DNA of 64,000 nucleotides from Haliotis rubra. Taxonomy: Eukaryota. The translations under genes were made by a program, and so were the position numbers. Below are positions 12,679-56,410 of the stretch, piece after piece. The notes under the pieces were generated by a model. The model searched no databases and had not been told where the DNA came from. It saw nothing but the letters and a program-made list of their open reading frames with translations. Position 1 is the first letter of the stretch, and every line of letters starts with the position of its first letter. The stretch spans positions 62,001 through 126,000 of the forward strand of contig NW_025767707.1 in assembly GCF_003918875.1 (NCBI RefSeq). Reading direction: 5' to 3'.

Positions 12679-14188
12679 CACCTAAACTATTAATATGTCC
12701 GCAGAGGTTGCAGTTTTGACTCACGTTTATAAAAAACAGACATTTGCTTGACATGCAAGATTCCTTAAAACGTATTTCTCGAAAATCAAAAATGTCAGGC
12801 TCCCCTTTTGCTGGGGAAAATGGTTGTCTTGAAGCAGAGGCCCAAAACTGTCCTTTCACTGAGAAAAACAACTTGAAATCATATAATTGTGGTTTTCTGT
12901 TCTAGATACTTGGGGCGGTTTGCAAACTTGAACACGTGAAAGGAAAATACTTTTTTATCAAATATAATTTATTCAAAATTGTGAAACGAATGAAAAGAAA
13001 GCACGAGGCGTGTGAATCTTGCAAAACGTCCATAATAGTCTTTAGTCAATGCCAGAAGATTTTTCAAAACACATCGCTCATGAATGTAAAGCTACAATGC
13101 GTTTTTGCAAGCTTGAGGTAATATTACATTTGGGATTACACTTTCTCAATCCCAAACATAGCATATGTAATACACTGCATCGTGATTAAATAGAAACAAT
13201 GAGGCCATTCGATGCATGACATCAGTAATATCCAAGACGATGATTGTATTACTATAAGTGACAAACACACACGTATAACAATATAGGAAACTCTCATAAC
13301 GATTCTTACGCAACGTTTCGATGATACTTCAACTATACCTAGGGTATTCTACTTTTCAAGATGGCGTTAAAGACCTGTTTGAAGGCCAACATCCTGCTCA
13401 TCCTAACCGTCATCTCTGCAATCATCGGCGTGACCATCGGGTTGCTATTTCGTCAGCTGCATCTCTCCCCGGAAACCATCCTTCTCATCAGTCTCCCAGG
13501 GGATACATTCATGAGGATGTGGAACATGCTTGTACTTCCGCTGATTGTTGCAAGCATGATCACAGGTAGAGTGAATTCTGTTTTACCCGGACGTTATTCT
13601 CTGGTTTGTTTTAGACCGCCATCGTATACCAGAAGTACAGTAGTCTGCCTCACAGTCCCTGAACTGCATTATTTTCCCTTGTGCTCACAGACCCGTGAAG
13701 ATCCGGGTTAGAATTGGTATTCAGCAACCAATACTTGTCGTAAGAGGCGACTAACAGGGTCGTGTGGTCAGACTCACTGACTCCGTATCCCAATGGCGTA
13801 GATCGATGCTCATGCTGTTCATCAATGGATTGTCTGGACCAGACTTGATTGCCAGACCGCTGCCATATAGCTGGAAGATAAGTAAACCAAGACTTTAAAC
13901 AATTGTGTCATACAGGAGTGTTAGAGGTGAGACCATTATTTTTGGATTCACAATTCCATCAATAATCAAATCTCGTCACGATCAAAAGCATTCATTGTAC
14001 AGTCGGTTATGTACATAACCTCATGGGGTCACTACACGTATTATATATTAGAATATTAATTCTATTTCGAGCCCTAATATTAAGTATCGTAGAACCGATA
14101 TTTATTGTAACCCGCGCATTAAATATGGGTTCTTTCCCTCGACATTTTTAAACGCTTGCTAAGATATACTGTCACTGAGATAGGCTTG

Positions 14189-14540
14189 TTCTCCATTTGA
14201 TTATTCCATCTGGAGTGACCTTATGTTTTAACAGGAATTGCTAACAAGAACAGAATGTCATCAGGAAAGATGGACCTGTTCTCCATTTGATTATTCCATT
14301 TAGAGTTAATTTATGTGTTAACAAGAATTGCTAACAAGAACAGGACGTTATCAGAAAAGATGGGCATGTTCTCCATTTGATTATTGCTTTTAGAGTAACC
14401 TTTTGATAGGAATAGCTAACATGGACAAAACGACATCAGGAAAGAAAGGCATGTTCTCCATTTAATTCGTCAGAGTTACCTTATATTGTCAGGAATTGCC
14501 AACATGGACAGCAAGTCATCAGGAAAGATGAGCTTGTTCA
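14189..14540 (+). repeat. ~90-bp tandem duplications of the intron 1/exon 2 boundary (also at 34850-35125 in copy C)
   Basis: Units of TTCTCCATTTGATTATT...TTAACAG|GAATTGCTAAC...TCATCAGGAAAGATGG repeat immediately upstream of the true acceptor. Confidence 0.9.
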
Positions 14541-15374
14541 CTATGGCCTACTATATTTCTACAACCATCATTGCAATCTGTATTGGCTTTGCTCTGGTGT
14601 TCATTATCAAGCCAGGATTACGTGACACGCTGGTGTCATCGGGTACGCAGTCTGAAGAGTTCCATGCTCCTTCGGCAGTTGACATGATTTTTGATCTCTT
14701 CAGGTGAGTGATGACAATTATAGATGTGCATTATCTGGTCTTACCTTGTTTTTGACTGACAGCCCTAATATCTAACTGAGATATATCTTTTTAATACCGT
14801 TTCCCAAACACCAAAAAGATGCCAGTGTCTTCAATGGTACATTTGTCCATTCTGCTGATTTCTCAGTTACTGACTTGCCTGTGCATGCGTTTGCGAGGAA
14901 TGCCGTCGATTGGACAGAATACAGCACAATTTGTGCCCCGAAATTGGGACTAGTTACTATCTGGCTTTGACGTTTTATATTTTGATCATGGAAATATTTT
15001 TGTCCCTTATAATACTAATAACTGGGTTAAGCGTACATCTACCCTTACAATTAAAGGAGTTAATGGAGTTTATCACAACCCGGAGTTCCCCACAGATTCG
15101 CACAGCCCTACTGTTTCCCTACTTGACACCCAAGTACAGACCCTACCATGGCTGGAAATGGCTGGAATGTTCTGGTATAAAATATACAAATACCAAATGT
15201 TTAAATATCATTAAGAGTGCACTGGACGAATAGGACTGCATCGCAGCAAATAGTTTGGGAAAAGGCGAACTTGATGAGTGTTTGGTCTTTCACACGATTA
15301 ATGACACTTCTATTTGTTAGTACAACTGCTGTAACTTCTGCTGCAAACACTGACACGTAATAATGACGCATTAA

Positions 15375-16010: not shown

Positions 16011-17298
16011 TCAACACATCGGAGATTCTATAATCGGGGATCCAGAAAGCTCCAGGAGTATGGATCATAGAAGAATCCTTGGAGGCGTAAGTATAACTAT
16101 GTGTAAAATCTGCATAACGTATAAAATCTCTAATTACGAACTCCAAATACGGTTTCAACAATATGTGACCTGGTTGTAGGTTGCAGTCGTTAATGTTATG
16201 GACTATGTTGTGTAACACATGTAACTGGTATTCTGAAGACTGTCATGTAGATGTCGTAATTCCCTGTGATGATTTCCTTTTTTCAGTAATCTGTTTCCAG
16301 ACAATATTGTTAGGGCTGCAATTCAAAGTTCACACACGGTATACGTCAAGGAAGAGTTCGTCAAGAGGGAATCTCCTGATGAATATGTGCTCCAGAATGT
16401 AACCAACTCAACGTTTCTGGTAGAATCTGATGGGAGAAATACTACAGAGGAAGAAACCCCATCTGGACAGCTAGGACTGTCACCAGACCCGGATTTAATG
16501 TTCTGGGTATGCGAAGGCTGGGAGCCTAAGTTTATCAACTGCAACTGTTTGTGTTTCTAGTAAGATTGGTTAAGAAATTATGTTGATGAAGAAGATTCGA
16601 ATTCCTGACTGTAAACAGTGTCTGAGTATAGAACTTTGAAAAAACGTGGAATCCAGCTTAGCAGCATGAACAACATATGATTCATTACATAAACGGGTTT
16701 ATTATTAGGTTCTCTGACGGTTACGCGTCATGGGATTCTTGCCAACCAGGCGATTTGGTTGCCAGTAGAACATCACATGAGAGTACATTGCAAAAAGACA
16801 CAAATGACTGTGTGTAAAGTAACAGTTACTTTCAATGTTTTTGCATTATAAGTAGTATGACACTGGGGCTCCGGCCGCAATTGCCATGGAAGGTTAATTA
16901 GAATGTAATTCTAGCCAAGCAGCTAATGAAAAAATGGTGTTAAATGTTTTATGAGCATGTTGGTTTTCCATTTGTAAGTCTTAATTTTTGTGTGGAAAAG
17001 TTAAGGCTTCCATAAGGATGAGCCCGATCTCATAAGAGATTACCATAAATTGGTTTCTAGATATTAACATATTTTAGTTCTGTGTGCAGCAGCGTGTAAA
17101 CTCACAGGTCAACCCGACCCTAAACAGCCAGGATTCAATTAGTCGTGGGGAATCGATACGAGTTGACAGCAGCCTGGCGACAGCTGCCAATCCCAAAGTC
17201 ACATGGTGTTTTGAACAAGCCATATTGTCGCCATTTGGGATCTACTGGAGAGCGCGTGTAGACCGGGAGGTAGGTGTTTGACTATTGTTTCCATAAAT

Positions 17299-17995: not shown

Positions 17996-18278
17996 TTAAA
18001 TGTAGCCGTAATATTGAGCGATGACTTTATGGATGGGATCTGTCATAAATTCCTCGAAGTAGGCTAAGGAGTAGGGAGAGTACGGTGCTGTGCGATCTCG
18101 GGTTTTGAGGCTATAATCGACCAAAGTATCCATGAGACGTTGTAACCGTTCGGTACCCACGAGACCTAAACTATCATACAGGGTGGTGAATTTCCCTCGA
18201 CTTGTTACTCGACGTAGGGGTGAGTAAATATTGAGCCCATTGACGTCCACCTAAACACGCCTGAACAACCGTCCACAT
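17996..18278 (-). CDS. Small hypothetical protein of the element, probably frameshifted near its start
   Basis: There is an 84-aa open frame (DVNGLNIYSPLRR...QYYGYI), with an upstream ATG at 18278 preceded by TATATATC. Confidence 0.35.
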
Positions 18279-18309
18279 GATATATACATATACGAAATAT
18301 ACAAATTTT

Positions 18310-20101: not shown

Positions 20102-20147
20102 TATTTATATTAAAAGTATATAATATTTGTTAAATAAATATAATATA

Positions 20148-22467: not shown

Positions 22468-22512
22468 CACTTATATTGAAATTATTATTATTACATTATA
22501 TATATTGTCAAT

Positions 22513-23965: not shown

Positions 23966-23975
23966 CATATATACA

Positions 23976-24600: not shown

Positions 24601-24621
24601 ACTTATATACATATATTTTCA

Positions 24622-25193: not shown

Positions 25194-26774
25194 CGTTAAA
25201 CTGTTTTATAGATATCAACAGAACAGATAAGCTATAACCCCCATCGGGCTCATCCTTATGGAAGCCTTCCACACACAAATTAAGACTTACAGATGGAAAA
25301 CCAACATGCGCACAAAACATTTAACACCATTTTTTCATTAGCTGCTGGGCTGGAATTACATTCTAATTAACCTTCCATGGCAATTGCGGCCGGAGCCCTA
25401 GTGTCAAACTACTTTGAAAAAAACGCGGCAATTGCCTTTCCCATAATCAGAAAAAAAATTATCTTATCAATACAATCGCACCGTTCTAACTATAGCATGA
25501 GGATCTAGCATCTGCAAATCTTTAATGGAATTGTGTTGTTCTGTTCCACAGGGATGTTGGTGTATTGTGCAGTATTTGGGGCAGTGCTTGGTAAACTAGG
25601 CCATAAAGGCCGGATCATCTTCAAGTTCTTTGAGGAACTGAATGAGATCACGATGGGCATTGTACAACTCGTTATGTGGTAAGTAATCCAGGACACCCCC
25701 TGCTGTTTCATACATAGATGAGACCCGCGAAGATCCGGGTTAGAATTGATCTTCAGTAACCCAGGCTTGTCGTAAGATACGACTAACGGGATTGGGCGGT
25801 CAGACTCGCCGACTTGGTTGACACGTGTCATAGTATCCCAGTTTCGCAGATTAATGCTCATGCTGTTAATCACTGGATTGACAGGTCCAGACTCGATTAT
25901 TTACAGACCCTTGTCACAGAGCTGAAATATTGCTGAGTGCGACGTTATACAACAAACAAACTCATACAGAAATGAATGGAGTATGTTTTAAACATATCAA
26001 GATTTTGTCTTTACTTATAATCAGCATCTCATGCATGTTCCATGAATATATTGTCATTGACCGTCAAAGTTGCGATCTATGGCTTCATGCTACAATATCC
26101 TGTTAATTATAGAATTTCAGCGAAACACTTTAAATGCTGATAAATAATGCACATGAACACTCTTTCAGCTAACTGCAGGAAACTGGTTACATTGCCCGGG
26201 TTTGAACCCTACATGGTGAAGACCTGTTAGGGTGTCCGCCGCAATGATTGTGCTGTGCATTATAAATGACTTTTGAAATTACTCGTCTACTCACGCAATA
26301 GCTGCAATAGTGCTCAGTGACCTACATATCAAGTAAATAATTCACGTACCAGTGTCTAAACTGACTCAAGCGACGTACGTATGGTTATGCATTTCACTTG
26401 TAACCATTATATATGTAACGATAATTTCATTATAGGCGTTGTAAATATACATTTCATTTACCCCGGCAAATATGTGTGTGAGCTAAATGATTCAAGAATG
26501 TAAAACAGCACTGAGCATGAACACTTCAATTATGTAATTCAATTGAACAATTCAATCATCAAAAATATGTCAAATGTTTACAATATGTTATACAGCTAAA
26601 GAGGTGGTAGGGTAGCCTTTTGGTTCAGGTGTTCGAAAGTGCCAGGGTTCAATTCTCCACATGGGAAGCCCATTTCTGATGTCCCCCGCCGTGATATTGC
26701 AGGGATATTGCTAAAGACGACATGAAGCCCAACTCGATCGATTAGAAAGTACATAGGAAGGGATGATGACAAAG

Positions 26775-26990: not shown

Positions 26991-28139
26991 TCTGAACACA
27001 AAAATAGTCTGAAATATATTTTCCGTTTATGTGCTCCCTTCATGTTTCACCTGCATAACACAATCTATAAACAAATGACATGTTCATGGCCTAACATGTT
27101 TCATTCTTTTGGACGATGAGAGCAGCTATGTCCTGGTGTTTCAGCGGGCGAATGAGGACTATCACTAATGTGAATGGAGACTGTATGGGCGCAGCTATTC
27201 TCCAGCACTTCTTCCATCAAGATGGCAGCAATCGTTCGGCATATGAAAAAAGCCCACTCTCACAGGACGAGAGAGAGATGGCGGACGTTCAGCCACTTGA
27301 ATAGGACGTGGAGTGTTGCACACGCTTTCATTATTCTCAGGAAGTCGTTTCACCGCTTGACTTTTTATCGCCGCCGAACACAACAATCGTCAACTCCATT
27401 TCATGTGTCATTGGGGCGTCTGGGTAGCCTGGTGGTTCAAGCGTTCGCTCGTCACGCCGGAGACCCGGGTTCGATTCCCCTCACGGGTACAATGTGTGAA
27501 GGCCATTTCTGGTGTCCCCCGCCTAGATATTGATGGAATATTGATAAATACTATACGAATATTGCAGAAACCTAACCTCACACATGTGTTTTAAAATCTC
27601 TGTTATTTGAAACGAAATGTGTTGTCTTTGGGTTATACTTTAAAATGCGTTTAGACATGGTAAGATCCATGTCTAGGAACCTGTTCAAACCCTACAAGTA
27701 AAACAGATCTCCACACGTTTTGGTTTACTAACAAGAAATTAATTTATCGCCTCATAGCCCTACACCACAAATACACATTCCTACCTAAACCTGTTAAACA
27801 TTGATCCTAAAGACGTATAGACCATAAAACATGGGACAAGGAACATGCTGAGCTTTGTATATGTGGGTTTCTGGCAATAAAGAATTGTAGCTCAGCTTGA
27901 TTTATTGTGGAAAGTTTCATGTAGGGATGGTCCTTGAATGAAAACTCTTGACCCAGTCATTACAGTATACGACGCTTATAAGGGACTAACAGACACAAAT
28001 AACTCTTTTGGTGTCTCGGATTCTTGGTGTATATTACAACCAACAAGGATATAACGAACCAAAATTATTTGTCCTTTTGAGTTCGTTATATACATAGTTT
28101 TTTGTTTGGGCCGTTATTGTTTGGACAGTTATTCTGTGA

Positions 28140-33763: not shown

Positions 33764-36700
33764 ATGGCGTTAAAGACCTGTTTGAAGGCCAACATCCTGC
33801 TCATCCTTACCGTCATCTCTGCAGTCATGGGCGTGACCATCGGGTTGCTTTTTCGTCAGCTTCATCTCTCCCCGGACACCATCCTACTCATCAGTCTCCC
33901 TGGGGATATAGTCATGAGGATGTTGAACATGCTCATACTTCCGCTGATTGTTGCAAGCATGATCACAGGTACAGCAGAATCTGTTTTAACCGGACGTTAT
34001 TCTCTGCTTTGTTTAAGACCGCCATCTTAACCAGAAGTACAGTACTCTGCCTCACAGTCCCTGAACTGCATTACTTTCCCTTGTGCTTACAGACCCGTGA
34101 AAATCCGGGTTAGAATTGGTCTTCAGCAACTGTTATTGTCATCCAGGCGATCGGGTGGTCTGGCTCGCTGACTGGGTCGACATATGTCATCATGTCCCAA
34201 TTGTGTACACTGATGCTCATGCTGGATTGTCTGGTCCAGACTCGATCACAGACCGCAGACATATAGCTTGAATATTGCTGAGTGCGGCATTAAACAACAA
34301 CCATCCATGCCTTCTTCTTAGCCTTTTCTGCAATTCTAAGCTCTAAATGAGGCAAGTCCAGATTTGCTCAAGTACATGATCTTCCATCTCTCTTGGGATC
34401 CTTTTCAATTTAATAGGATTTGTTTGTTTTTATGAAAATTATATATTTTGAACGACTGGTGTCATCACTGGTGATGTTGTACTGTATTATAACATTTGGT
34501 TTTGGATACATTTATACGTTTTGGTAATTTAGGTAACTAATATACACGGAAATTACGTAAACCAAATTTTCAAGCAAATGCATCGTGCAATAGTACTGAC
34601 GGCGAGACTACTACTTTTGGATTCACAATTCCATCAATAATCAAATCTCGTCACGATTAATAGCTTTCATTAACAGTCCTTTATGTACAAAACCCCATGA
34701 AGTCACTGCACGTATTATACATTAGAATATTAATTCTAGTTCTAGCCTAAATATTAATTAACGTATTCATTACAACCCGCGCAAGTTATTGGTTCTTTAC
34801 ATCGATAGTTGTAAGAACTTGCAAAGAAACACTGTTACTGAGATAGGCCCGTTGTTCATTTTATTATTCCTTTTAGAGTTACTCTGTGTTTTAACAGGAA
34901 TTGCTATCAAGAACAGAATGTCATCAGGAAAGATGGGTCTGTTCTCCATTTGATTATTGCCTTTAGAGTTACTCTATGTTTTAACAGGAATCGCTAACAC
35001 GGGCAGCACGTCATCAGGAAAGATAGGTCTGTTCTTAGTGATTATTCCATTTGACGTTACTTTATGTTTTAACAGGAATTGCCAACATGGACAGCAACTC
35101 ATCGGGAAAGATGGGTCTGTTCACTATGGCCTACTATATTTCAACAACCGTCATTGCAATCTGTATTGGCTTTGCTCTGGTGTTCATTATCAAGCCAGGA
35201 TTACGTGACACGCCGACGTCTTCAGGCACGCAGTCTGAAGAGTTCCATGCTCCTTCGGCAGTTGACATGATTCTTGATCTCATCAAGTGAGTGATGACAG
35301 TTATAATATACGTATAAACTATCTGACCTTGCCTTGTTTTCGACTGACAGCCCTAATGTCTCCTTTGTACATTTGTCCATGCTGTTGATTTCTCAGGTAC
35401 TGATGTGCCTTTGCATGTGTTTGTGATGAGTGCCATCGATGGGACAGTATGCAGCACAATTTTGTCCCCAAACTGGAACTGATTATTCTCTAGCTTTGAC
35501 TTTCTATATTTTGATCATGGAAATATTGTCGCTTATAATACTGAAAACTGGGTTAAGCGTACATCTGCACTTGCAATGAAAGGAGTTAATTGAGTTTATC
35601 ACAGCCCGGAGTTGCACAGTCAAGGTTGTACTTTACTGAGAAAGTGTAATACCAAATATACCATATATTACATTTGACCACTTTCTAAAATGGCATTATG
35701 TATTTTCATAGCTTTCGGCCGTGGGAGCCGTGCCAATTAACACTTATCAGAGGGATACACAAAGTCCGCAGTCTATACTACCAGTTGTCCAACTTCCATT
35801 TTTGTGTAAGCCGCGGTGGCTAAGTGGTCTGGGTGTCTGACTTTCTGTGCTTGCGATTAGGTGCCTGACTCTGAGGGTGTGGGTTCGAATCCCGGATGGG
35901 ACTCAACCCCCCCAAAATACTAGAATCTGTACTTTACTGAGAAAGTGTAATCCCAAATATAACATATGTTACATTTGACCACTTTTAAAATGGCATTGTG
36001 TATTTTCAGAGCTTTCGGCCGTGGGAGCCGTGCCAAATTAACATTTATCAGAGGGGTACACAAAGTCAGCAGTCCAGACTACCAGTTGTCCAACTTCCAT
36101 TTTTGTGTAAGCCGCGGTGGCTGAGTGGTCTGGGCGTCTTAAATTCTTTGCTCGCGATTAGGTGCCTGACTCTGAGGGTGTGGGTTCGAATCCCGGATGG
36201 GACTCAACCCAAAAAGTACTAGAATCTGTACTTTACTGAGAAAGTGTAATCCCAAATATAGCATATGTTACATTTGACCACTTTGTACCCTTATGGGTTT
36301 TTTAAAAATTATCCAGGCTATCAACAGCCATTCCATGTATGGCACCCATGAAGGGCCAACTCCTCGTGGTGGGTGCTGGGTAACGCTAAGCGCCCTTCAA
36401 CCCCCCGTTGTGGACCCGGGGGTATATTTGGTCCACCAACCTGTTGGCCGTGGGTTGCGCCCCTGTGTCGGTGGAGGACGGGAGTCTGGTGGTTGAGGGC
36501 ACTGGGTCCAGGAACAGTGTTCCTTTGCCCAACACATCACTTCGCCCCTTACTTCACCTAGACGGGTGGTTGAATGGGCCCGGTTCAACCAATCGGCAGG
36601 TCACGTCATGCCCTGTGCATTGTATTTGAAATTGTACAAATTTGATTGATATTAATAATCCTGATAAAGGGCATTGTTCAACTTACTTCACTAAATTTAT

Positions 36701-39700: not shown

Positions 39701-42700
39701 AGGATGATGGCGCGGTGGACTTGTGCCACTGTCATTGGATCCAGAACAATCTCTTCTCGTTTACCAGATAACAGCTCTATTTTTACAGCAGAAGCAAACG
39801 CCATGTTAACAGCCTTAACAGATATTAATAAACACCGTAAATATAAACAATATATCATCTTTTCAGATTCTCTTTCGTGTCTTCAGGCTATTAAAATATT
39901 TCTTGCAAACATCCACTTTTATTAGAAATTATTGAATTGTGCAATGAACTTGCTACTGGCCAATGCGACATCGTCTTTTGTTGGTTACCCAGCCACGTTG
40001 GCATTTCTGTGAACACAATGGCTGATATTGCTGCTAAGGCAGCACTCAACAAATCTGTGACACCACTTCTTATTCCTTACTCTGATTACAAAGCTTGCAT
40101 TAGAACTTACATCCGTGTTCCGATGCAGAAGAAGTGGGACACCCAAGTAGGTATCAATAAATTACATGAAATAAAACCCTATATCGGTTACACTTACTCG
40201 GGTTGTCAGTCCACAATTGAGGAGGTCATCATACGACGATGTCGTATTGGCCACACAGGATATACTCATGAGTACCTATTAAAAGGTGAGGATCCTCCGT
40301 TTTGTATCCCTTGTGATGAAAGAATCACGGTCAAGCATGTCCTGCTTGACCGTGTTGAATATTCCATCACAAGGGATATTTATTTCAAAAAATACTATGA
40401 AGGATCTTTTTAGTAATATAAGTTCTCATTTAATTATTGCCTTTTTAAAAAAATTAGACTTGCTAACTGATTTGTAAATAGATATATATTTTATTATTGG
40501 TAGTTTAGATTAGTAACTGAGATTGTTAGTGGCTGTACCCTCAAAGGGAGTTGAAGTAGTGTAAAATTATTGTCCTCCTGAGAGGGTACGTAAGTCCCAA
40601 AATGTTCAAAGTCCATTTAAACTTGCCAGGATTTTTAAACGTAGAATTTTTGTTATTTTAATTTTGGCTAACATTTCTTACAATCACAAGCAGCTGAAGG
40701 GATGGTGTAAATCCAACTAGGGTCCATGCAGGTAGCAAAGGTACTGTAAGTCCCCATGGGCCCTAGTATGGTGATGTACCTTCTGATGTTGGCGATCTAT
40801 AGCCTGATTTTATATTGTATTGTCCCAATAGTGCTATTAGTTTTAAACTTTCCACGCTAGTTTTAATTCTAATTGTGATAATCTAGTGCTTTTACTGTCC
40901 TTCGTTGACAGGGTTTTATATATTATATGTATGTATTATAAATTTAGAACTAGTTTTAGTCACGCTATGGATGAAATATTGCCGATGTGACTTTAAATCT
41001 TAACTCACTCACTCACTCACCCCATTCCATGTATACATGGGTAGAGTCAGGCCTTTAAACTACAATAAAACACAATTTCTGGCCAAATTGCCCAGCTCAT
41101 TTTCGAAGCACAGGAAGTGGAACACATCAACTCCAGTTCGGCGCCAAATGTCACCTACTGGAAAATATATGTACACACAATAAGTATAAGTCATGGTGAT
41201 AAAAATAACAGCGCTTAATACTCAAAATTGTGGTCATTTGTAATTACTTGATGGAGGTACTTTTTAAAAGCATAAACATCTTACATTATTTCATCCAATC
41301 ACAGCTCTCACAAGTCTCTCTTCAGTTGTTTACATACGGTGCTCGCCCAGGGAACATGTGGTTCTGATTAAGTGTAGTGGAACCTATTCAAGACTCCCAA
41401 GTACAGACCATTGTATGGCTGGAATGTTCTGGGTATTAAATATAAACATACAAAACGTTTTAATAATAGACTGTAACAAACCACTGTACGAGTAAGACTG
41501 CATCACAACCAAATACTCTGTGAAAAGGTGAACATTAAAAGTAAAATGACAACATAACGTCAATATTTCATCTATTCACAGAACTTCATTACATGTCGGA
41601 ATATTCAATGACTGCCTGCAATGCGAGACCTGGTGCCATCTCAGTGCTTGTAGAATTAAGTAACTTCTGTTGCAAAAACTGGCATGTAATATTTACGCCT
41701 GAACACATCAAGATGATATAATCGGGGATCCAGAAAGCGCCAGAAATATGGATCATAGAAGAATCCTTGGAGGTGTCACTATAAATAAGTGTAAAGTCTC
41801 TAATTACAAAGTCCAAACCTTTGCTGCAAAAGCCCTTTTATGAAATACGGTTTCCACAATGTGTGATTTGGTTGTAGGTTGCAGTTGGTAATGTTATGGA
41901 CTCTGTTGTGTAACACATGTAACTGGTATTCTGAAGTCTGTGATGTAGATGTCGTAATTCCCTGTGATGATTTCCTTTTTCAGAAATCTGTTTCCAGACA
42001 ATATTGTTAGTGCTGCAATTCAAAGTTCACACACAGTATACGTCAAGGAAGAGTTCGTCAAGAAGGAATCTCCTGATGAATATGTGCTCCAGAATGTAAC
42101 CAACTCAACGTTTCTGGTAGAATCTGATGGGAGAAATACTACAGAGGAAAGAAACCCCATCTGGACACCTAAAACTGTCACCAGACCCGGATTTAATGTT
42201 TTAGGCATGTGAAGGCTTGGATAATTGGTAACATAGACTGTGCTCTTCATACGTTGCTCAGAAAAAATGTGAAGCTTAGAAAAAAACAACTGGAGACAAC
42301 CTTTTCTGTCATGTCTAAATATTTGCGCTGTATTACCGTTTAATATTTTGCGAATACATGAATTCATTGACTTTCGATGATCATGATTTTACCTTTTATT
42401 CACCCTTTTTATTTGGTACTGTTGACGTGGATTTTTTTGTTGGGTGTTGTCTTTGGTTGTCTTTGGGTTTTAGTTTTCTANNNNNNNNNNNNNNNNNNNN
42501 NNNNNNNNNNNNNNNNNNNNNNNNNNNNNNNNNNNNNNNNNNNNNNNNNNNNNNNNNNNNNNNNNNNNNNNNNNNNNNNNNNNNNNNNNNNNNNNNNNNN
42601 NNNNNNNNNNNNNNNNTTTTTATATTATATGTTTTTTGTTGTTGTTATTTTGTTTTTCTTGTTTTGTTTTCTTTCTTCTTTTTTTTTGGGTGGGGGGTCT

Positions 42701-45700
42701 ATATGTTTATCAACTGTAACTGTTTTTCTAGTAAGGTTTGTTTATAAAATATATATGTTGATGAAATGGATTCCAAACCTTGACTTTAAATTTTAAACAG
42801 TGTCTAGATATAGAACAGATTTTTGAAGACCGTCGAATCCAACTTAGCAACATGACCAACATAGGATTCAATATATCAACGTGTTGATTATTAGTTTTTC
42901 TGACGCGTCATCGCTTTCTCGCTAACCAGGCCATTTTGTTACCAGTAGAACATCACATGAGAGTACACTGGAAAAAAGACATAATGACTGTGTGTAAAGT
43001 ACCAATTACTTTTAACGTTTTTCAGTCAAAATCTACTACATTATAAAAACGCGACCTTACCTTTTCCATACTCATAAAACATATCTTTTAAATGCAGGGT
43101 CAATCGCACCGTTCCAACTATAGCATGAGAATCTAGCATCTGCAAATCTGTAATGGAATTGTGTTGTTCTGTTCCACAGGGATGTTGGTGTATTGTGCAG
43201 TATTTGGGGCAGTGCTTGGTAAACTAGGAGATAAAGGTCGGGTCGTCTTCAAATTCTTCGAGGAACTGAATGAGATCACGATGGGCATTGTACACCTCGT
43301 TATGTGGTATGTAATCCAGGACATCCCCTGCAGTGTCATACATAGATGAGACCCGCGAGGATCCGGGTTAGAATTGATCTTCAGTAGCCCATGCTCGTCA
43401 TAAGAGGCGACTAACGGGATATGGTGATCAGACTCGCTGACCTGGTTGACATAAGAACATGTAATCGTATCCCTATTTGGTAGATCAATGCTGAAGCTGT
43501 TGATCACTGGATTGTCTGGTCCGGATTCGATTATTTACAGACCACACAGTTGTAATATTGCTGAGTGCGACGTTAAACAACAAACAAACTCGTACATAGA
43601 TGAATGAAGTTTGTTTAAAACAAATTAAGATTTGGTTTTTAATTATAATCAGCATCTCATGCATGTTCCGTGTATTGTCATTGACCGTCAAAGTAGCTAG
43701 ATATGGTTTCATGCGACAATGTCCTGTTAAATTATAGATTCCGGCGAAACACTTTAAATGTTGATAAATGATACACACGAACACCACGTACTATTTCAGC
43801 TACATGCAGGAAACTTACATGTTTGAAAGAAGTATATTTACTGCACATTTCTGTTGCCCGGGTTTGAACCCCACATTGCTATAAATTGTCCCACATGGTA
43901 TAAATTGTGAAGACCTGTTGTGTCCGCCGCAGTGATTGTGCTGTTTGAAATTACTCGTCTACTCACGCAATAGCAGCAATAATGCTCAGTGGCCTACCTA
44001 CCCAGTATAATATATAATCCACGCACCAGTGTCTTAAACTGACGCAAGCGACTTACGTATATTTGTGCAGTTTGACTTGTAACCATTGCGTGATAATTTA
44101 ATCGTTGTAAATATACATTTACCCTGACAGATATGCCTGAGAGCTAAATGATTCAAGATTATAAAACATCACTGAGCATGAACTCTTTACTTATTTAAAA
44201 TCTAAAATTGTGCAAATGTTTACACTATTTCATACAATTTAAGGGGCGGTAGCTTGGTGGTTAAAGCGTTCGAAAAAGCTAGGGTAAGATTCTCCACATG
44301 GGAAACCCATTTCTGGTGTCCCCCCGCCGTGATATTGCAGGGAATTCGCTCCCGCACGCCCTCAACCACTCACCCACTTAATCAACTTGCTAACAGCATA
44401 TTTTGTTACAGGATCACGCCTATTGGCGTACTGTCCCTCATCGCTGGAAAGATCTTGAGTGTGTCCGATCTCGCTGGGATGGTTCATCACATAGGGATGT
44501 TCTTGGCCACCTGCATGGCCGGTCTTTTTGTGCAAACTATTGTCGTAATACCATTGATATACCTCATTCTGACACGGAAGAACCCCTTCATGGTGACGCT
44601 GGGAATAGTGCAGGCTCTTCTGACAGCTCTGGGCACCAATTCCAGGTCTGGCATAGCAATCAATCACTTAAAAATGAGACATGTAATGACGTTCTATGAA
44701 AAGTTGAAATACTGACATTATATTGGTCCGAGAAAAGCCATTGTAGATATTTAATGGCATTTTTCTGATCTTGGTTTGGTCATTCCGTAATTTATTGGTT
44801 AGCGGTGGTTAGCCTAATGGTTAAGGCGTTCAGTCGTCACCCGGTCGTCAAGACCTTGGTTCGATACCCCACATGGATACAATGGCACTGATATACTCAC
44901 TCACTCACTCGTCCGTGTGCAAAATATGTATTATGTCGGAAAGCACTCGTAAAATCTCCAAATCATCATCGTCAATCCCTAAATATATGTTGGTGAGTTT
45001 GTAAATATCTTTATTAAAACCAAAATGTAAAGCAATTTACATTTTATGCTGAAACTTCAAACAGTTTGCAGAGAATGTTAAAGATCCTTTTTATTTTTGT
45101 CAGTGCTGCAACACTTCCGGTTACCATCGACTGCTGTGAGAAGAATCTTAAGATAGACAGGACTATCAGCCGGTTTGTGCTACCTATCGGTGCTACTGTC
45201 AACATGGATGGAGCTGCCATCGTCCTAGTCGTCACCCCGGTTTACATAGCACAGATCAGCGGAGTGCACCTATCTGTACTTGACGTCATGGCTCTTGGGT
45301 AAATGAGTTTTTACATACACACTGCAAATGTCACATTCAGAAATATTCAAGCTGTATGGCGGCGGTCTGTAAATAATCGGGTTTGGACCAGACAATCTTG
45401 TGATCATCATCACGAGCATCGATCTAAACAATTGGTGTAAAATGTGCCAACCAAATCAGAGAACCTCTTACGACCAGCATGGGTTGCTGAAGACCAGTTC
45501 TAACCCTGATCTTCACAGGTTCAGGGCAAATGATAGTTACAAAAACCTTATCAAAATTAATGAGAACATTCAATTGCATGATTTCGACGACATCACAAGT
45601 ATTGATACAGTGTGATTTTTAGTAGTGTGCTGCTATATCATTGCCTTTTTTATAAGAAAGAGTTATATTCATTATACAAATCACATTTAAGCAATAGTTG

Positions 45701-48700
45701 AATGACAGTCTTTGAAATCTTATAGAAATACTACATCGTATCTTACATGTAGTCCTGTTGTCGACCTGATGCTACTGGAACAATGTTCAAAGGGGCGTGA
45801 AACCAAACTCACTCACTCACTCTTCGATTAAGCAGGAACTGTCGATCTTCGTACTAATGTGATAAATATCCCTAATCTGTTCGCTACCATAGTTTGGTTT
45901 GGTGGTTGATTAACGCCACATCCAGCAATGTGAAAACTGTATGGCGGCGGCCTGTAAATAATCTAGTCTGGACCAGACAATCGAGTGACTAACAGCATCG
46001 ATCTACGCAAATGGGATACGATGACATGTGTCAACCAAGTCAGCGAGCCAGACCACCCGATCCCGTTAGTCGCCTCTTACGACAAGCATGGATTACTGAA
46101 GACCAATTCTAACCAGGATCTTCACCAGTCTATTTGCGAGAGAGATTTGGGAAGGGACAGAGATGGCGACGTCACATCCCGAAGAAGAACTGGAAGGAAG
46201 TGGGTACTGGTTAATGTTATAATTAAAGATGACCGTAGAACAACTGACCCAATTTTACGAAAGCCCAATGCTGCCTATTTTGTATCAAAACATATTTTTC
46301 AGCGACATTTCTCGTTGCTTCCCGGTCGAGTATTTTTCCTTATTTCAATTAATTGTCGTTGCTCCGAATATTTTCTCGTTCCTTCAACTATTTTCAAGAA
46401 TTTCAAGGGGTTTTTTTCAAAATACTCGAAGGAACGAGAAAATACTTGAAATATCAAGTTTGTGACAGAAACTTGAAATTACGAGAAAATACTCGAAGCA
46501 ACCAGGAAATAATCTAAGCAAAGAGAAAATAATCTAAGCAACGAGAAAATAATTTAAGCAACGAGAAAATATATGAAGCAGCGAATAAATAATTGAAGCA
46601 ACGAGAACTTTCGCCGAAATTTTTTTATGCTACAAAAGTGGCAGCATTAGGCTTTCATACAATTTGAATGAAGAAACTGGAAGTAGGATCGATACAATGA
46701 GAAACATCGCTATCTATTGTACCCCAAAGTAACATCTTGGCGGACGGTTGAAGATCATCTGTCATCATGCAACGCATAACAGTATTGAAATCAGGGTGTC
46801 ACCCCCATAAGTCATTCGTCCCATTAGTCAGACGACTTAAATAAACACATGTCATGGTTGATTCTTCTTACATATGAACCCTTAGTACCTCTGTAGGTAA
46901 ATGGAATGACCCATATGAAACGAAACAAAACGAATTTATAGGAACAGTTTATTTGAGTCATTCTCGTAGTTCGTGCATATTTCAAGTTTTCTGTGCTTGT
47001 TTTACATTGAAATGTTTTACGTTTGTAGTATTCTGAATATTAAGTATACAAAACATAAATAATGCAAGCTTAACGACATTTCATTTATCATATTTAACAC
47101 TTTTTATTAGAAATTTCAGGAAATTGCGCCACTACCGTTACGAAATTTGTAACGGCATTTTGAAAAGAGAAAAATCCAAAACTCTTATCATTTAATGTAC
47201 ATATTATTATATTGGAATGTATAGTTTTACATTATAACATGGCTAATCGGTTTTTGAATATCATATTCATTGCTTAAATGGGACAGACAAGCCCACAAAT
47301 TCATTCTAATTTGCATAAGCATAATTACATAAAGTAATATGTCGCAAGAAATTCAAAATGAGAATATGAATTATATTATGCTTACTTGAAGCACTACTAC
47401 CAAACATACATGCACTACTAATTCCAAACATAAACAGATAAATCAATTTTGATTAAGTAAGGAAAATGATAATGTTAGGGCATGGACTGTGGCATTAATT
47501 GTTACGGTGACACAATAACGGCAGTGACATTTTTAATAATAGCCAGTATTATATGTTTACTTTAAAAGCTGATTTAATGAAATTTGTTAGTCAGATATTT
47601 CAGAATGTTTGAAGAATATGTAACAGGCAAAGATTTACTTAGATGTCCCTGTAATGTTAAACACAGGTGAAGACTGCATCTTACGGCAGTGACATTGTGA
47701 CAATATAGAATGTCACTACCCTAACGGCCCTATCACAGCCGTTTTCTTCTTTGTCACAGCCGTTACACTACCCTGTCCTTACCGTAACAACAAATCATAC
47801 TTACATGCTTATTGATTTTATCTATTTGATACAAAAAATATTATGTTAAATAAGATTCCAAAACATTGAATATCTTCGAATTGAAACTTTAGATGCAAAC
47901 AACATTAAACTAGAAAAATCTCACTGTCGCCTCAAAATCTGTCCTTACCTACAAAACTTGTGTGCCTCGCCTTAATGTCACATACTCAACTTCTATAAAG
48001 CTGCCATAATGACGAATAAGTGATGCTTCTTCGATCTTGGGGCAATATATATGTAGTTATTCTTAAACAATCTACAACATCAGTAGACACAAAGTTTTTA
48101 AAAAATAGAGTTTCCTTAAATCTGCATAATATACTATCCCAAAAAAGAAACGCATAGGTGTTTTGTATTTCAAAAAATATATTAATTACCTATTGTGTTC
48201 AAACAAGGATTAAAGGATTGCAAGGATTAAAAAGGTATCGCCACAATGCAACAGAATTCACCTTCCAGTTGAAATTGTGCAGCAAAGAGCATGTACTATC
48301 TGGATATAAAAATCCAGATTACTTTGACGCTGCGACACGGAACATCGCCATTGAAAGAATGCACGCTGGAGATTACCAATCTTCTGTTGCCAGGCGTCTG
48401 AATGTTAGTCTGAGCACGATATCACGGCTTGCAGCTCGTTACAACCAAACAGGTATAACAAATGACCGTCCACGAACAGGCAAACCTGCAGCCCAAGATC
48501 GGTACATCCGGGTACTACATTTGCGTGATCGTACTGCCACGGGTGAGAGCACAGCAGCCAAGTTGCCTGGACTTCGGAGGATATCCGCTCAAACTGTACG
48601 CAACAGGTTCAGAGAGATTGGACTGAAAACCAGGAGACCCGACGTCGGGACCGTGCTACGTCGTCACCATCGCGCTCAACGTCTCTGTTATCTAAAATTA

Positions 48701-50029
48701 TCCATCCGTTGTATACACAGTACTTTCTTCTCAACTGACGTAAAAAAATCATGTACTAAAGTCTATTTGTGGGCGAGTTATACATGTTTGAAAATACAAC
48801 ATTTTGCAACAGATTTCTGGTCTATGCGTTTCTTTTTTTGGATAGTATAGTTTAATTCGAATCGGAAATGGAATTATATTCTTACCCCGTTTTTCTAAGA
48901 ACATATTCAAAACAATCGGTATGCAGAGTAGACGTATTGAATCATGTTTGACTATCACCTTGTATCTCGCACAATAAAAGCGGACGAGTCTATTGTATCG
49001 TAAGGAGCATGACCCTTGTTGTTTTAATTAATCCGGTCCGTTCCGTATGTAGGCTGCTTAGCAAGACAATTGTGCAAAATGTGATTAAAGCACCAAACTT
49101 GGCACAAATGTTCACTAATATGTAGTGATCATTTAAATATAAGGAGGCATTAGAAATAATCATTCTTCAGCGCATGCGCAACATCTGAATAATGCAATCA
49201 TGAACACTTCCGTATGAGAAATGGGCGTATGACTAATGGGATACAACCGAAATCGGATGTGGAATGCAAATTGTTGAGAAAACTACTTATGATATCATTT
49301 CAGCGTGGCTGGCACCCTCACTAGCATTGGGACCGCTGGTATACCTAATGCTGCCATAGTAACCATCATGGTTTTTCTAGCCAATATGGGACTACCAACA
49401 AACGAAATCTACATCATTTTTGCCATGGATTGGTTTCTGTGAGTATTTTCAGCGAGAAATGACACACTTATAGTGATACTGTTTGATTTTGATTAAATAC
49501 ATGCAAAAAATTTCTGGCACATATTTTAAAGAATATTCGACGATTATACTTGAAATGTTTTACAAAACTGCATATGCTTTCACGTAATATAATCTTTGAA
49601 CGTCGATACCTTGTACATTTCTGTATGTGTATGCTCACGTAACGACTCCTCCTTGCCAAATATACAAATATGGAATATAGATCAGGTGCTATTTGTGTAA
49701 TGCAAACATCAAGTAGATTAGCTACAAGACAATGACGAACACTGTTAACTAAACACCGCCCGTTTATGTGTTCCCTTCATGTTCCACCTGCATAACTCAA
49801 TCTATAAACGAATGACCTGTTTATGGCCTAACATGTTTCATTCTTGAGGACCATAACAGCAGCTATGTTCTGGTGTTTCAGCGGGCGAATGAGGACTATC
49901 ACTAATGTGAATGGAGACTGTATGGGCGCAGCTATTCTGCAGCATTTCTTCCACCAGGATGGCAGCAATGGTTCGGCATATGAAAATAGCCCACTCCCAC
50001 AGGACGAGAGAGAGATGGAGGAAGTTTAG
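33764..50029 (+). CDS. SLC1A-family transporter copy C, complete, 491 aa; exons 33764-33968, 35076-35286, 41984-42204, 43180-43306, 44412-44645, 45104-45298, 49304-49438, 49882-50029
   Basis: Exon lengths 205+211+221+127+234+195+135+148=1476 nt give consistent phases. The product has the full SLC1 architecture (NILLILTV, LPGDIVMRMLNML, NLFPDNIV, NVLGML, HP1, NMDG, HP2, TM8). The model needs a GC donor after exon 3. Confidence 0.9.
35628..36284 (+). repeat. ~300-bp tRNA-related repeat in head-to-tail tandem (2 units plus a partial third); a diverged single copy at ~51278-51620
   Basis: Each unit has A box TGGCT(A/G)AGTGG and B box GGTTCGAATCC. The block TACTTTACTGAGAAAGTGTAAT...TTTGACCACTTT occurs three times. 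Confidence 0.8.
36341..41021 (+). mobile_element. I-group (Nimb-like) LINE with RNase H, with an internal deletion joining ORF1 to the ORF2 endonuclease
   Basis: ORF1 starts ...IKRLRSGSLLIEC...PHTTLNTSKG and is fused to HNPLWGG (APE). Downstream motifs are GSDHFP, YRPISLTS, FFDLEKAYD, PQGSILS, LFVDD and RNase H (FTDGS, FSDSLS, WLPSHVG). It has a (CACT)n tail and a 13-bp TSD CCATTCCATGTAT at 36328-36340 and 41022-41034. Confidence 0.93.
42481..42616. other. Assembly gap (N run); a second gap at 50253-50387
   Basis: Both intervals are runs of N. Confidence 1.
46256..46659. mobile_element. Non-autonomous DNA transposon with TAY...RTA ends and a 6-bp TSD (IS3EU-like)
   Basis: TIRs are TACGAAAGCCCAATGCTGCC and GGCAGCATTAGGCTTTCATA, with TSD CAATTT on both sides. 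It contains internal 20-bp repeats (GCAACGAGAAAATAAT) and is absent from intron 6 of copy A. Confidence 0.75.
46794..49248. mobile_element. Non-autonomous DNA transposon with ~30-bp imperfect TIRs and a 7-8-bp TSD, hosting nested insertions
   Basis: The ends are GGGTGTCACCCCCATAAGTCATTCGTCCCATT and AATGGGCGTATGACTAATGGGATACAACC, flanked by GAAATCA(G) and GAAATCG(G). The empty site is visible in copy A at ~8357-8365. Confidence 0.7.
48132..48847 (+). mobile_element. Tc1-family transposon, internally deleted (HTH region kept, DDE lost)
   Basis: TIRs TACTATCCCAAAAAAGAAACGCATAG and CTATGCGTTTCTTTTTTTGGATAGTA are flanked by TA. It encodes VARRLNVSLSTISRL, DRPRTGKP and ISAQTVRNRFRE. Confidence 0.9.
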
Positions 50030-52517: not shown

Positions 52518-53112
52518 GTCTACTGTCAATAATATTTAAAATGTGTTTGCATTACATTTAAAAACAGAGCAATCACATCCCTCGATACTCTTAAATATCC
52601 AAGACTATACAACATGCATTGTGGACCCTTTTGAGTCTCTATTTGTTTTTAAACAATGTGTCTTTGCTTAAGTATCCAACGCGTATATTTCGCTACAATA
52701 ATTAGAGGTGAACGTGTCATATGGCTACAGTTGATTCGTAAATGGACTATGAGGGGTGTTTGGGGAAGCACTTGGTTGCAAACGGGTTTTTTATCAGCGT
52801 CCAGACATTATAATGTTTCTGCATTTTGTTCACACGTATTATCATCCAAGTACTGTTTGTACTGCATTGGACGGGTTGTTTTGTCTCTAGGCTGTCCTAC
52901 TGCCCCACTGACCTCTTCCTCTACCCAATAACTACGAATAGAACCCACATGCCTGTATTTGATTCTTCGTGACCAGAGATAATGAAGACATGTTCGTTAT
53001 TATTCTTGACACGAAGGTTTATGTATGTAGCCATAGAAATATGTTTTTAAAAAATTAAATTTTAAAAAGAACATACCGTGAAAATCTGGATGAGAAGTGA
53101 TTCTCAGCAACC

Positions 53113-56100: not shown

Positions 56101-56410
56101 TTACGTATCACACAATTATCAACTACTCCCCAACACATTTATGCAGCATTCACTATTAAGTATCACACAATTATCAACTACTCCCCAACACATTTATGCA
56201 GTATTCACTATTAAGCATCACACAATTATCAACTACTCCCCAACACATTTATGCAGCATTTACTATTAAGCATCAACAATTATCAACTACTCCCCAACAC
56301 ATTATGCAGCATTTACTATTAAGTATCACAAAAAGTATCAACTATTTGCCAGTTTATTTATATAACATTTACTATTAAGCATCACAAAATGATCAGCTAC
56401 TCCCCGGCTT
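53113..56410. repeat. 55-bp minisatellite/satellite array, ~60 copies
   Basis: The unit is CATTTATGCAGCATTCACTATTAAGCATCACACAATTATCAACTACTCCCCAACA. Confidence 0.98.

What the first reader, a model, noticed from the sequence alone, without database searches (positions are those of the whole stretch)
45104..49990. SLC1 paralogues with a rewired substrate site: TM8 Asp to Gly, NMDGA, Arg kept
Seen: TM8 reads [18 protein letters not shown], against EAAT AVDWFLDRLRTTTNVLGD. The Gly is present in the last exon of all three copies, so it is not an error. TM7 reads NMDGAAIV(Q/L), against NMDGTALYE. Established: this Asp (GltPh D394, EAAC1 D444) binds the substrate alpha-amino group and is replaced in bacterial DctA dicarboxylate carriers. 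The retained Arg (R397) binds the distal carboxylate, NMDGA is ASCT-like, and the Na+ ligands (NMD, TM8 N/D, TM3 YY.STT) are intact. Inference: this expanded animal SLC1 subfamily is probably not a glutamate transporter. It may carry dicarboxylates or N-substituted compounds such as succinate, malate or opines, or act mainly as a ligand-gated anion channel.
Basis: partly seen in the sequence, partly recalled or inferred. Interest (0 to 1): 0.8.

Follow-up and report, generated by a model that had tools for sequence, protein, structure and literature searches.

The report
Abalone SLC1 transporters lacking amino-binding aspartate
Blacklip abalone has a tandem set of intact glutamate-transporter-family genes in which the aspartate that holds a substrate's amino group is a conserved glycine, so they probably carry something other than glutamate, as one mosquito relative is known to do.

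Summary
The window is Haliotis rubra contig C2817. My eight-exon model of copy C (33764-50029, 491 aa) is identical to the NCBI protein "excitatory amino acid transporter 1-like [H. rubra]" (P0152).

The first full codon of the last exon is GGG (Gly) in copies A, B and C. It aligns without gaps to EAAT1 D476, EAAT3 D444 and ASCT2 D464. R447, T448, N451, D455, NMD and the TM3 YY..TT motif are kept. T370 is Ala, the Y373-E374 pair is V-L or V-Q, and HP1 S331 is Asn.

Copy B on this contig is a broken allele. It has a 2.6 kb deletion of exons 5-7 and a 1-bp frameshift. Its allele on haplotig C46 is intact.

Gly444 occurs at 11 further last exons on five other contigs (two on the haplotig, one with a stop), with three synonymous Gly codons, and in four Haliotis species. 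It falls in one abalone-only clade that also holds A/Q, S/Q, M/V and G/I variants at positions 444/447. dN/dS among the tandem copies is 0.21-0.35.

The closest precedent is the mosquito dicarboxylate carrier CuqDCT (D444N + T448A). Abalone keeps T448, so dicarboxylate transport is plausible but unproven. I found no RNA evidence. The scan flagged similar SLC1 pockets elsewhere in this genome (s1-339742, s1-345026). Verdict: new variant of a known kind.

The parts
33764..33968 (+). Copy C exon 1 (start codon, TM1-TM2)
   Evidence: Splice model. Identical to RefSeq protein P0152.
35076..35286 (+). Copy C exon 2 (TM3, AYYISTT Na3-site motif)
   Evidence: Pfam SDF hit on C2817:97057-97341.
41984..42204 (+). 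Copy C exon 3 (extracellular glycosylated loop). The donor is GC rather than GT.
   Evidence: Copies A, B and B' have GT at the same place. The RefSeq model uses the same junction.
43180..43306 (+). Copy C exon 4 (TM4)
44412..44645 (+). Copy C exon 5 (TM5-TM6 and the start of HP1, ...ALGTNS)
45104..45298 (+). Copy C exon 6 (HP1 SAATLP, TM7 NMDGAAIVL: A370, V373, L374)
49304..49438 (+). Copy C exon 7 (HP2 GTAGIPNAA and the start of TM8, AMDWFL)
49882..50029 (+). Copy C exon 8. Gly444 codon GGG at 49883-49885, then [12 protein letters not shown], the tail and the stop.
7012..7245 (+). Copy A exon 5. Exons 1-4 lie 6-12 kb upstream of the window.
7716..7910 (+). Copy A exon 6 (NMDGAAIVQ)
8412..8546 (+). 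Copy A exon 7
9066..9222 (+). Copy A exon 8 (Gly codon at 9067-9069)
13361..13565 (+). Copy B exon 1
14493..14703 (+). Copy B exon 2
16287..16506 (+). Copy B exon 3 with a 1-bp deletion (frameshift) relative to its allele on C46 and to copy C
25552..25678 (+). Copy B exon 4
26735..26745 (.). Junction of a roughly 2.6 kb deletion that removed exons 5-7 of copy B on this haplotype
   Evidence: blastn of B against the C46 allele: B 1-1440 maps to 39-1473 and B 1441-2031 maps to 4088-4675.
27145..27304 (+). Copy B exon 8 (Gly codon at 27146-27148)

Best explanation
Shown: the window holds a tandem array of abalone-specific SLC1 (EAAT/ASCT family) genes. Copies A and C are intact, copy B is a deletion allele, and the copies evolve under purifying selection.

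Shown: the fold, the elevator hairpins, the three Na+ sites and two substrate-carboxylate ligands (R447, N451) are kept. The Asp that salt-bridges the substrate alpha-amino group is Gly444. The carboxylate-contacting Thr370 is Ala. HP1 Ser331 is Asn. The Y373-E374 pair tied to K+/H+ coupling is V-L or V-Q.

Inferred: these proteins are Na+-coupled, K+-independent carriers (net symport or exchange). Their substrates would be di-acidic compounds without a free protonated alpha-amino group. The best guesses are C4/C5 dicarboxylates such as succinate, malate or 2-oxoglutarate, or N-substituted (imino) diacids that use the space left by Gly. They are not classical high-affinity Glu/Asp transporters.
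For: Gene reality:
- The model is identical to RefSeq P0152.
- Pfam SDF matches full length, 352.6 bits, positions 2-386 of 387.
- The AF2 model has mean pLDDT 78.8, with TM8 helical through Gly444 and the TM7 break at NMD.
- Foldseek target-normalised TM-scores to EAAT3 and ASCT2 reach 0.93.

Site mapping: ungapped alignments to EAAT1, EAAT2 and ASCT2 and the residue table.

Selection:
- dN/dS is 0.21-0.35 among A, C and B'.
- The Gly codon is GGG, GGC or GGT in different paralogues.
- Gly444 is present in H. rubra, H. rufescens, H. cracherodii and H. asinina proteins.
- Position 444 (G, A or S) marks one 16-member clade with SH-aLRT support of 93.

Function of the residue:
- Neutral D444 mutants of EAAC1 lose Glu/Asp transport and gain succinate binding (PMC2151622).
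- The mosquito SLC1 carrier CuqDCT (N444, A448) transports succinate, malate and 2-oxoglutarate with Km of 10-50 uM, against about 1.1 mM for Glu. It shows no K+ counter-transport current. N428D reverses its selectivity (PMC3737229).
- The E373Q and Y403F equivalents lock EAATs in exchange mode (as summarised in PMC11297037).
Against: - Thr448 is kept. In EAAT3, D444S or D444N alone gave no dicarboxylate transport, and only D444S/T448A did.
- D444G itself has not been tested.
- Neutral D444 mutants still bind acidic amino acids at 0.1-1 mM, so low-affinity amino acid handling is not excluded.
- Sister subclades carry Asp or Glu at HP1 position 331. This could relocate the amino-binding charge.
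- No transcript, tissue or transport data were obtainable.
Confidence: 0.45

Rival explanations
1. The proteins are ASCT-like, low-affinity amino acid exchangers. The substrate amino group is held by HP1/HP2 backbone carbonyls and Asn331 alone. The proteins exchange acidic or other amino acids, with Na+ but without K+ coupling.
For: - TM7 is ASCT-like: NMDGA, with an F/V-Q/L pair instead of Y-E.
- Neutral D444 mutants of EAAC1 still bind L-Asp and L-Glu (IC50 12-1220 uM across the neutral mutants).
- Position 331 co-varies with Gly444, taking N, D, E or A.
- T448 is retained.
Against: - All characterised amino-acid-carrying SLC1 members, ASCTs included, keep D444 (PMC3737229).
- D444 mutants do not translocate amino acids.
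- Arg447 is kept, unlike in ASCTs.
- The clade is not sister to the one vertebrate ASCT sampled (shark ASCT1) in the tree.
Confidence: 0.25
2. The proteins are mainly a substrate-gated anion channel or sensor. They bind a ligand and open the SLC1 anion pathway but translocate little.
For: - D444 mutants bind ligands without transport.
- The EAAT3 D444S/T448A mutant showed a relatively larger Cl- conductance.
Against: - All three Na+ sites and both hairpins are conserved.
- Nothing in the sequence specifically marks a channel-only member.
- This could not be tested with these tools.
Confidence: 0.12
3. The genes are young tandem duplicates drifting towards loss, and Gly444 is a tolerated inactivating change.
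For: - Copy B on this contig is broken.
- One C336 copy has an in-frame stop.
- dN/dS of 0.2-0.35 is relaxed compared with typical transporters.
- No transcript fragments were found in the protein database.
Against: - ORFs are intact in A, C, B' and in orthologues from four species.
- Gly is kept with synonymous codon changes across subclades whose tree branch lengths are several tenths of a substitution per site.
- Pocket and Na+-site residues are invariant.
- dN/dS is well below 1.
Confidence: 0.1
4. It is a splice or annotation artefact, and the true mRNA restores Asp.
For: No RNA reads could be laid on the junction.
Against: - The junction has canonical GTGAGT and tttcag sites at a phase shared by every paralogue examined.
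- No nearby acceptor gives a GAY codon.
- Independent RefSeq models in four species all read DW(F/C)(L/M/Q)G-R.
Confidence: 0.03

Closest known systems
CuqDCT / AeaDCT, the mosquito SLC1 dicarboxylate transporters (Wang et al. 2013, PMC3737229)
   Same: Both are animal EAAT-derived SLC1 carriers in which D444 is neutralised while R447 and N451 are kept. CuqDCT shows no K+ counter-transport current. Both arose by lineage-specific change of a glutamate-transporter-like ancestor.
   Different: The mosquito proteins have Asn444 plus Ala448. Abalone has Gly444 with Thr448 kept, plus T370A, S331N and loss of the Y-E pair. The mosquito case is one gene per species, while abalone has a multi-clade radiation. 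The origins are independent (mollusc versus dipteran). Abalone function is untested.
Bacterial DctA C4-dicarboxylate transporters
   Same: Same fold and family (PF00375). Both have a neutral residue at the 444-equivalent position and keep the Arg.
   Different: DctA has Ser and Ala at the 444 and 448 equivalents. P0152 scores 149 bits against a DctA cut-off of 513. The higher DctA than GltP score is not diagnostic, because the shark ASCT1 shows it too and canonical EAATs score the two models about equally. The protein is an animal EAAT relative at about 40% identity, not a DctA.
Vertebrate ASCT1/ASCT2 (SLC1A4/5)
   Same: TM7 reads NMDGA and has a Q-type residue in place of the proton-acceptor Glu. 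By analogy, both would lack K+ coupling.
   Different: ASCTs keep D444 and replace R447 with Cys, Ser or Thr. Abalone does the reverse. The abalone clade does not group with the one vertebrate ASCT sampled (shark ASCT1) in the tree.
EAAT1-5 and canonical mollusc EAATs
   Same: About 40% identity, the same architecture, Na+ sites, R447, T448, N451, D455 and a glycosylated TM3-4 loop. H. rubra also has canonical NMDGTALYE genes on C2297 and C102.
   Different: D444G, T370A, S331N, Y373V and E374L/Q, and GDC instead of GD(S/A).
EAAC1/EAAT3 D444 point mutants (Teichman and Kanner 2007, PMC2151622)
   Same: Both have a neutral residue at 444 with R447 and T448 intact.
   Different: The laboratory mutants do not transport. 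The natural proteins have been maintained by selection and carry further pocket changes. D444G was not among the mutants tested.

Membership tests
SLC1 / sodium:dicarboxylate symporter family (PF00375) | Full-length match to the family profile above its cut-off | tested here: met
   352.6 bits against a cut-off of 27.9, profile positions 2-386 of 387.
SLC1 / sodium:dicarboxylate symporter family (PF00375) | SLC1 fold with HP1, an unwound TM7 NMD and HP2 | tested here: met
   AF2 model with pLDDT 78.8. There is a helix break at 366-367 and loops at 331-336 and 405-413. Target-normalised TM-scores to EAAT3 and ASCT2 reach 0.93.
SLC1 / sodium:dicarboxylate symporter family (PF00375) | Na+ site residues (TM3 T92/T93, N366, M367, D368, N451, D455) | tested here: met
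   All are present in P0152 and in copies A and B'.
EAAT-type glutamate/aspartate transporter | Asp444 (EAAT3 numbering) binding the alpha-amino group | tested here: not met
   Gly444 in copies A, B and C and in the rest of the G/R subclades.
EAAT-type glutamate/aspartate transporter | Arg447 binding the distal carboxylate | tested here: met
   R447 is present.
EAAT-type glutamate/aspartate transporter | Y373-E374 pair linked to K+ and H+ coupling | tested here: not met
   V373-L374 in copy C and V373-Q374 in copy A.
EAAT-type glutamate/aspartate transporter | High-affinity Na+/K+-coupled Glu/Asp uptake | not testable with these tools
   This needs expression and transport assays.
ASCT-type neutral amino acid exchanger | Asp444 kept and Arg447 replaced by Cys, Ser or Thr | tested here: not met
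   Abalone has G444 and R447. The shark ASCT1 control shows D and C.
ASCT-type neutral amino acid exchanger | Grouping with vertebrate ASCT (one shark ASCT1 sampled) | tested here: not met
   The abalone proteins form their own clade with 99 support, separate from the shark ASCT1/EAAT group.
DctA C4-dicarboxylate transporter | Score above the NCBIfam DctA subfamily cut-off | tested here: not met
   149.4 bits against a cut-off of 513.
DctA C4-dicarboxylate transporter | Ser and Ala at the 444 and 448 equivalents | tested here: not met
   Abalone has Gly and Thr. The DctA residues are taken from PMC3737229.
CuqDCT-type animal SLC1 dicarboxylate carrier | Neutral residue at 444 with R447 and N451 kept | tested here: met
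   G444, R447 and N451.
CuqDCT-type animal SLC1 dicarboxylate carrier | Ala at 448 | tested here: not met
   T448 in all G/R subclades.
CuqDCT-type animal SLC1 dicarboxylate carrier | Preferential dicarboxylate transport | not testable with these tools

The most novel reading that the evidence does not exclude
Abalone evolved a lineage-specific radiation of SLC1 carriers. It has at least five subclades and six different residue pairs at positions 444/447 (G/R, A/Q, S/Q, M/V, G/I, D/R). Their pockets have been repurposed for non-amino-acid organic anions. Candidates are dicarboxylates from the algal diet or gut microbes, or the imino-diacid opines (tauropine, strombine, alanopine) that abalone make in anaerobiosis. 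If so, this would be the largest natural re-engineering of the SLC1 substrate site known in animals. It would also be a route to dicarboxylate-type selectivity that does not need the T448A change.
Probability: 0.3. Interest if true: 0.75.

Novelty: new variant of a known kind. Interest (0 to 1): 0.6.

Why it matters
Asp444 was reported as strictly conserved in eukaryotic SLC1 proteins except for one mosquito dicarboxylate carrier (PMC3737229). The abalone clade is a second, independent and much larger exception, with a different residue solution: Gly444 with Thr448 kept, plus changes in HP1 and TM7.

It offers natural test cases for what sets amino acid versus dicarboxylate selectivity and K+ coupling in the glutamate transporter fold. 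It also means that the "excitatory amino acid transporter-like" labels on these abalone genes are probably misleading. This matters for transcriptomic and selection studies in a farmed and virus-affected species.

Tried and rejected
- RNA evidence. The look-up of sequencing runs returned two runs whose kind is not on record, and no run on record as RNA. Laid on 44300-50100, their contigs cover the introns as well as the exons, with most laid records 90-95% alike, so they are genomic DNA and not transcripts. No splice junction could be read.
- Transcript-derived protein fragments. A search with P0152:372-491 found only one short NCBI model from the same contig and no Logan fragments.
- Gly-type TM8 outside Haliotis. 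A search restricted to residues 396-468 found only Haliotis proteins plus two canonical outliers. The exon-6 HMMER search and the full-length search gave the same picture. No other vetigastropod proteins appeared, so the age of the clade is open.
- NCBIfam DctA versus GltP scores as a functional hint. I rejected this. P0152 favours DctA by 27 bits, but so does the shark ASCT1, and the other G/R subclades do not.
- Full census of TM8 residues in all 40 or more NMDG exons of the genome. The census therefore rests on loci already held.
- Alternative acceptor restoring Asp. There is none in the sequence.
- Taurine as substrate. I judged this unlikely because taurine needs an amino-group ligand.
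- Ligand docking. The tools give no model coordinates or suitable ligands, so it was not done.
Full report
**What is in the sequence**

The window is eukaryotic DNA at about 38-40% GC. It corresponds to G000:C2817:62001-126000 of a 1.38 Gb assembly. Motif scans of six-frame translations found SLC1 exons for three tandem + strand genes. A self-blastn showed the three gene regions are colinear at about 70-88% nucleotide identity.

For copy C I derived an eight-exon model with exons at these coordinates:
- 33764-33968
- 35076-35286
- 41984-42204
- 43180-43306
- 44412-44645
- 45104-45298
- 49304-49438
- 49882-50029

All introns are GT-AG except intron 3, which is GC-AG. The ORF is 491 aa. This protein is identical to P0152, NCBI "excitatory amino acid transporter 1-like [Haliotis rubra]". 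P0152 is encoded on a 363,495-bp contig, which is the length of C2817. The organism is therefore blacklip abalone, and an independent annotation uses the same splice sites, including the GC donor.

**The observation**

Exon 7 ends ...AMDWFL with the Leu codon split CT|C. Exon 8 begins tttcag|C GGG CGA ATG AGG ACT, giving [13 protein letters not shown]. The DNA here is identical in copies A (9067), B (27146) and C (49883).

phmmer alignments to solved human EAAT1, EAAT2 and ASCT2 are ungapped through HP2 and TM8. They place the Gly on the conserved Asp (iiavdwflDrlrtttnvlgd against [21 protein letters not shown]) and the second Arg on the EAAT Arg.

P0152's own numbering happens to match EAAT3 numbering in this region.
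- Changed: N331, A370, V373, L374, G444.
- Kept: Y88, Y89, T92, T93, N366, M367, D368, D440, R445, R447, T448, N451, D455.

TM7 reads NMDGAAIVQ in copy A and NMDGAAIVL in copy C. I found no AG acceptor near 49882 that would yield an Asp codon.

**State of the three copies**

Copy A is intact. Exons 1-4 lie 6-12 kb upstream of the window and exons 5-8 are at 7012-9222.

Copy B in the window has exons 1-4 and 8 only, with a 1-bp deletion in exon 3. Contig C46 carries the same locus at 97-99% identity and is the other haplotype. There, B' is intact with all eight exons. The alignment shows a clean deletion of about 2.6 kb in C2817 at about 26740 that removed exons 5-7. The statement "all three copies" therefore holds for the last exon only.

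Pairwise dN/dS by the Nei-Gojobori method is 0.21 (A-C), 0.34 (C-B') and 0.35 (A-B'). This indicates purifying, somewhat relaxed selection. The TM7, HP2 and TM8 core is unchanged apart from HP2 in B'.

**Family and fold**

Pfam SDF matches full length at 352.6 bits. The best solved relatives are EAAT1, EAAT3 and EAAT2 (E about 1e-115 to 1e-120), then ASCT2 and ASCT1, then the archaeal homologues.

An AlphaFold2 model built on a 38-sequence alignment has mean pLDDT 78.8 and pTM 0.77. TM8 is one continuous helix (431-466) through Gly444. The expected TM7 break at NMD and the HP1 and HP2 loop tips are present. Foldseek gives target-normalised TM-scores of up to 0.93 to outward and intermediate states of EAAT3 and ASCT2. 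The protein is a complete SLC1 transporter.

**How widespread the change is**

A Pfam search of the whole assembly found more than 40 NMDG-type exons. Some of these are haplotig duplicates, as with C46. Searching with the last exon found G-R-M-R-T or G-R-V-R-T at these places:

| Contig | Last exons with Gly444 |
|---|---|
| C2817 | 3 |
| C46 (haplotig) | 2 |
| C2201 | 2 |
| C1635 | 1 |
| C336 | 5, one with a stop |
| C357 | 1 |

The Gly codon is GGG, GGC or GGT in different paralogues. Two other types appeared: S-R-M-Q-C on C2461 and A-R-M-Q-G on C217. Canonical NMDGTALYE exons also exist on C2297 and C102.

Database searches returned relatives above about 50% identity only from H. rubra, H. 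rufescens, H. cracherodii and H. asinina. The searches were HMMER over 1.84 billion representatives with exon 6, and word-based searches with a full-length relative and with the TM8 region. The next hits are canonical EAATs of other gastropods at 43-46% identity.

In a maximum-likelihood tree of 40 proteins, all non-canonical Haliotis sequences form one clade (SH-aLRT 99). It is separate from the canonical mollusc EAAT clade. The order within it is:
- a basal D/R pair;
- then an M/V protein;
- then a 16-member clade (support 93) carrying G, A or S at 444.

Four state changes explain position 444. The G/R state occurs in three subclades. An A/Q plus S/Q subclade and a G/I protein are nested among them. 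The radiation is abalone-specific as far as the databases show, but no other vetigastropod proteins were seen, so its age is open.

**What it most likely does**

Teichman and Kanner showed that EAAC1 D444S, D444C, D444A, D444N and D444E lose Glu/Asp transport. The small neutral mutants (S, C, A) gain succinate binding at about 0.8-1.3 mM, but D444N showed no succinate inhibition even at 10 mM. All still bind acidic amino acids. D444G was not tested (PMC2151622).

Wang et al. characterised CuqDCT, a mosquito SLC1 protein with N444 and A448 (PMC3737229).
- It prefers succinate, malate and 2-oxoglutarate (Km 10-50 uM) over glutamate (Km about 1.1 mM).
- It shows no K+ counter-transport current.
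- The N-to-D mutation switches it back to glutamate preference.
- In EAAT3, only D444S/T448A transported succinate. D444S or D444N alone did not.
- The paper states that D444 and T448 are otherwise strictly conserved in eukaryotic SLC1 proteins.

The Y-E pair of TM7 is tied to K+/H+ coupling, and E373Q and Y403F give exchange-only behaviour (summarised in PMC11297037).

From these facts I infer the following for the abalone G/R proteins:
- They bind Na+, because all the Na+ ligands are intact.
- They are not K+-coupled, because Y373, E374 and D444 are all changed.
- They keep ligands for two acid groups (R447 and N451).
- They lack the counter-charge for an alpha-ammonium group.

The most economical reading is a carrier or exchanger for di-acids without a free amine. 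Gly leaves room for a substituent, so N-substituted or imino diacids are also possible. My own knowledge, not tested here: abalone accumulate opines such as tauropine in anaerobiosis. These are di-acids of suitable length, but this remains speculation.

The caveats are listed in the evidence-against field: Thr448 is kept, Thr370 is lost, and sister subclades have Asp or Glu at HP1 position 331, next to position 444 in the fold, so the amino-binding charge may have moved in them. I put the di-acid carrier reading at about 0.45, and the narrower claim "not a classical Glu/Asp/K+ transporter" at about 0.75.

**Comparison and novelty**

The protein is a member of SLC1. It fails the defining site tests for EAAT (D444, Y-E), ASCT (D444 kept, R447 replaced) and DctA (cut-off score, Ser/Ala). 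It only partly matches the CuqDCT signature (neutral 444 yes, Ala448 no).

Full-text searches of the paper library for abalone SLC1 expansion, for Haliotis with excitatory amino acid transporter, and for CuqDCT found no description of this clade. I rate it a new variant of a known kind. It is an independent and much larger natural loss of Asp444 in animal SLC1, with a different residue solution.

**What could not be done**

No RNA evidence was obtainable. No coordinates or ligands were available for docking. Other first-reader notes in this scan flagged "rewired" SLC1 pockets on other pieces of this genome. My census shows these are probably members of the same radiation.

Noticed in passing
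window 53108-56405: A 55-bp satellite of about 60 copies at 93% match. It explains the extreme negative GC skew at 52-57 kb.
   Followed up: partly
window 34856-35122 and 14187-14467: A 90-bp tandem triplication straddles the intron 1 acceptor and the first roughly 46 nt of exon 2, in both copy C and copy B. Only the last repeat is in frame with the exon, because the upstream copies are separated from it by a stop.
   Followed up: partly
window 42205-42206: Intron 3 of copy C has a GC donor. Copies A, B and the C46 allele of B have GT at the same position. The RefSeq model uses the GC site.
   Followed up: yes
window 16842-25408: A GC-rich insertion of about 8.5 kb (up to 49% GC) sits in intron 3 of copy B and has no counterpart in copy C. 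The same intron is about 9.1 kb in the C46 allele. It overlaps another first-reader note (s1-349538, a capsid-encoding element). The two large ORFs I scanned had no Pfam hit.
   Followed up: partly
window 710-1723; 31051-31593; 36874-40413; 48158-48850: Transposon ORFs lie in and between the genes: a retroviral-type integrase (rve + H2C2) in intron 4 of copy A, reverse-transcriptase ORFs between copies B and C and in intron 2 of copy C, and a Tc3/mariner-type HTH transposase fragment in intron 6 of copy C.
   Followed up: partly
window, for example 9927-10152, 13689-13879, 25721-25958, 28144-28364, 34091-34303, 43349-43589, 45327-45520, 45897-46131, 51060-51226, 58945-59140: A dispersed repeat of about 190-240 bp, SINE-like, occurs in both orientations at 70-85% identity. 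The DNA runs laid on the window show enormous depth over it.
   Followed up: no
G000:C46:7768-34776 (loci L048, L049, L051, L052): Contig C46 is the alternative haplotype of this locus. Copy B is intact there and intron 4 of copy A is about 1.2 kb instead of about 13 kb. The array is therefore structurally polymorphic between haplotypes, and haplotigs inflate SLC1 copy counts in this assembly. C217/C2461 look like another such pair.
   Followed up: partly
Proteins P0161-P0164, P0171, P0232, P0218, P0011; loci L045, L046: Sister abalone SLC1 subclades carry other 444/447 pairs: A/Q and S/Q (with 448 as A, G or C), G/I, M/V, and a basal D/R type with GD replaced by SD. HP1 position 331 co-varies, taking N, D, E or A.
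   Followed up: partly
Literature, PMC9327721: A resequencing study of H. rubra after the abalone herpesvirus outbreak lists 17 candidate SNPs in a gene annotated SLC1A2. Which of the many paralogues this is was not determined.
   Followed up: no
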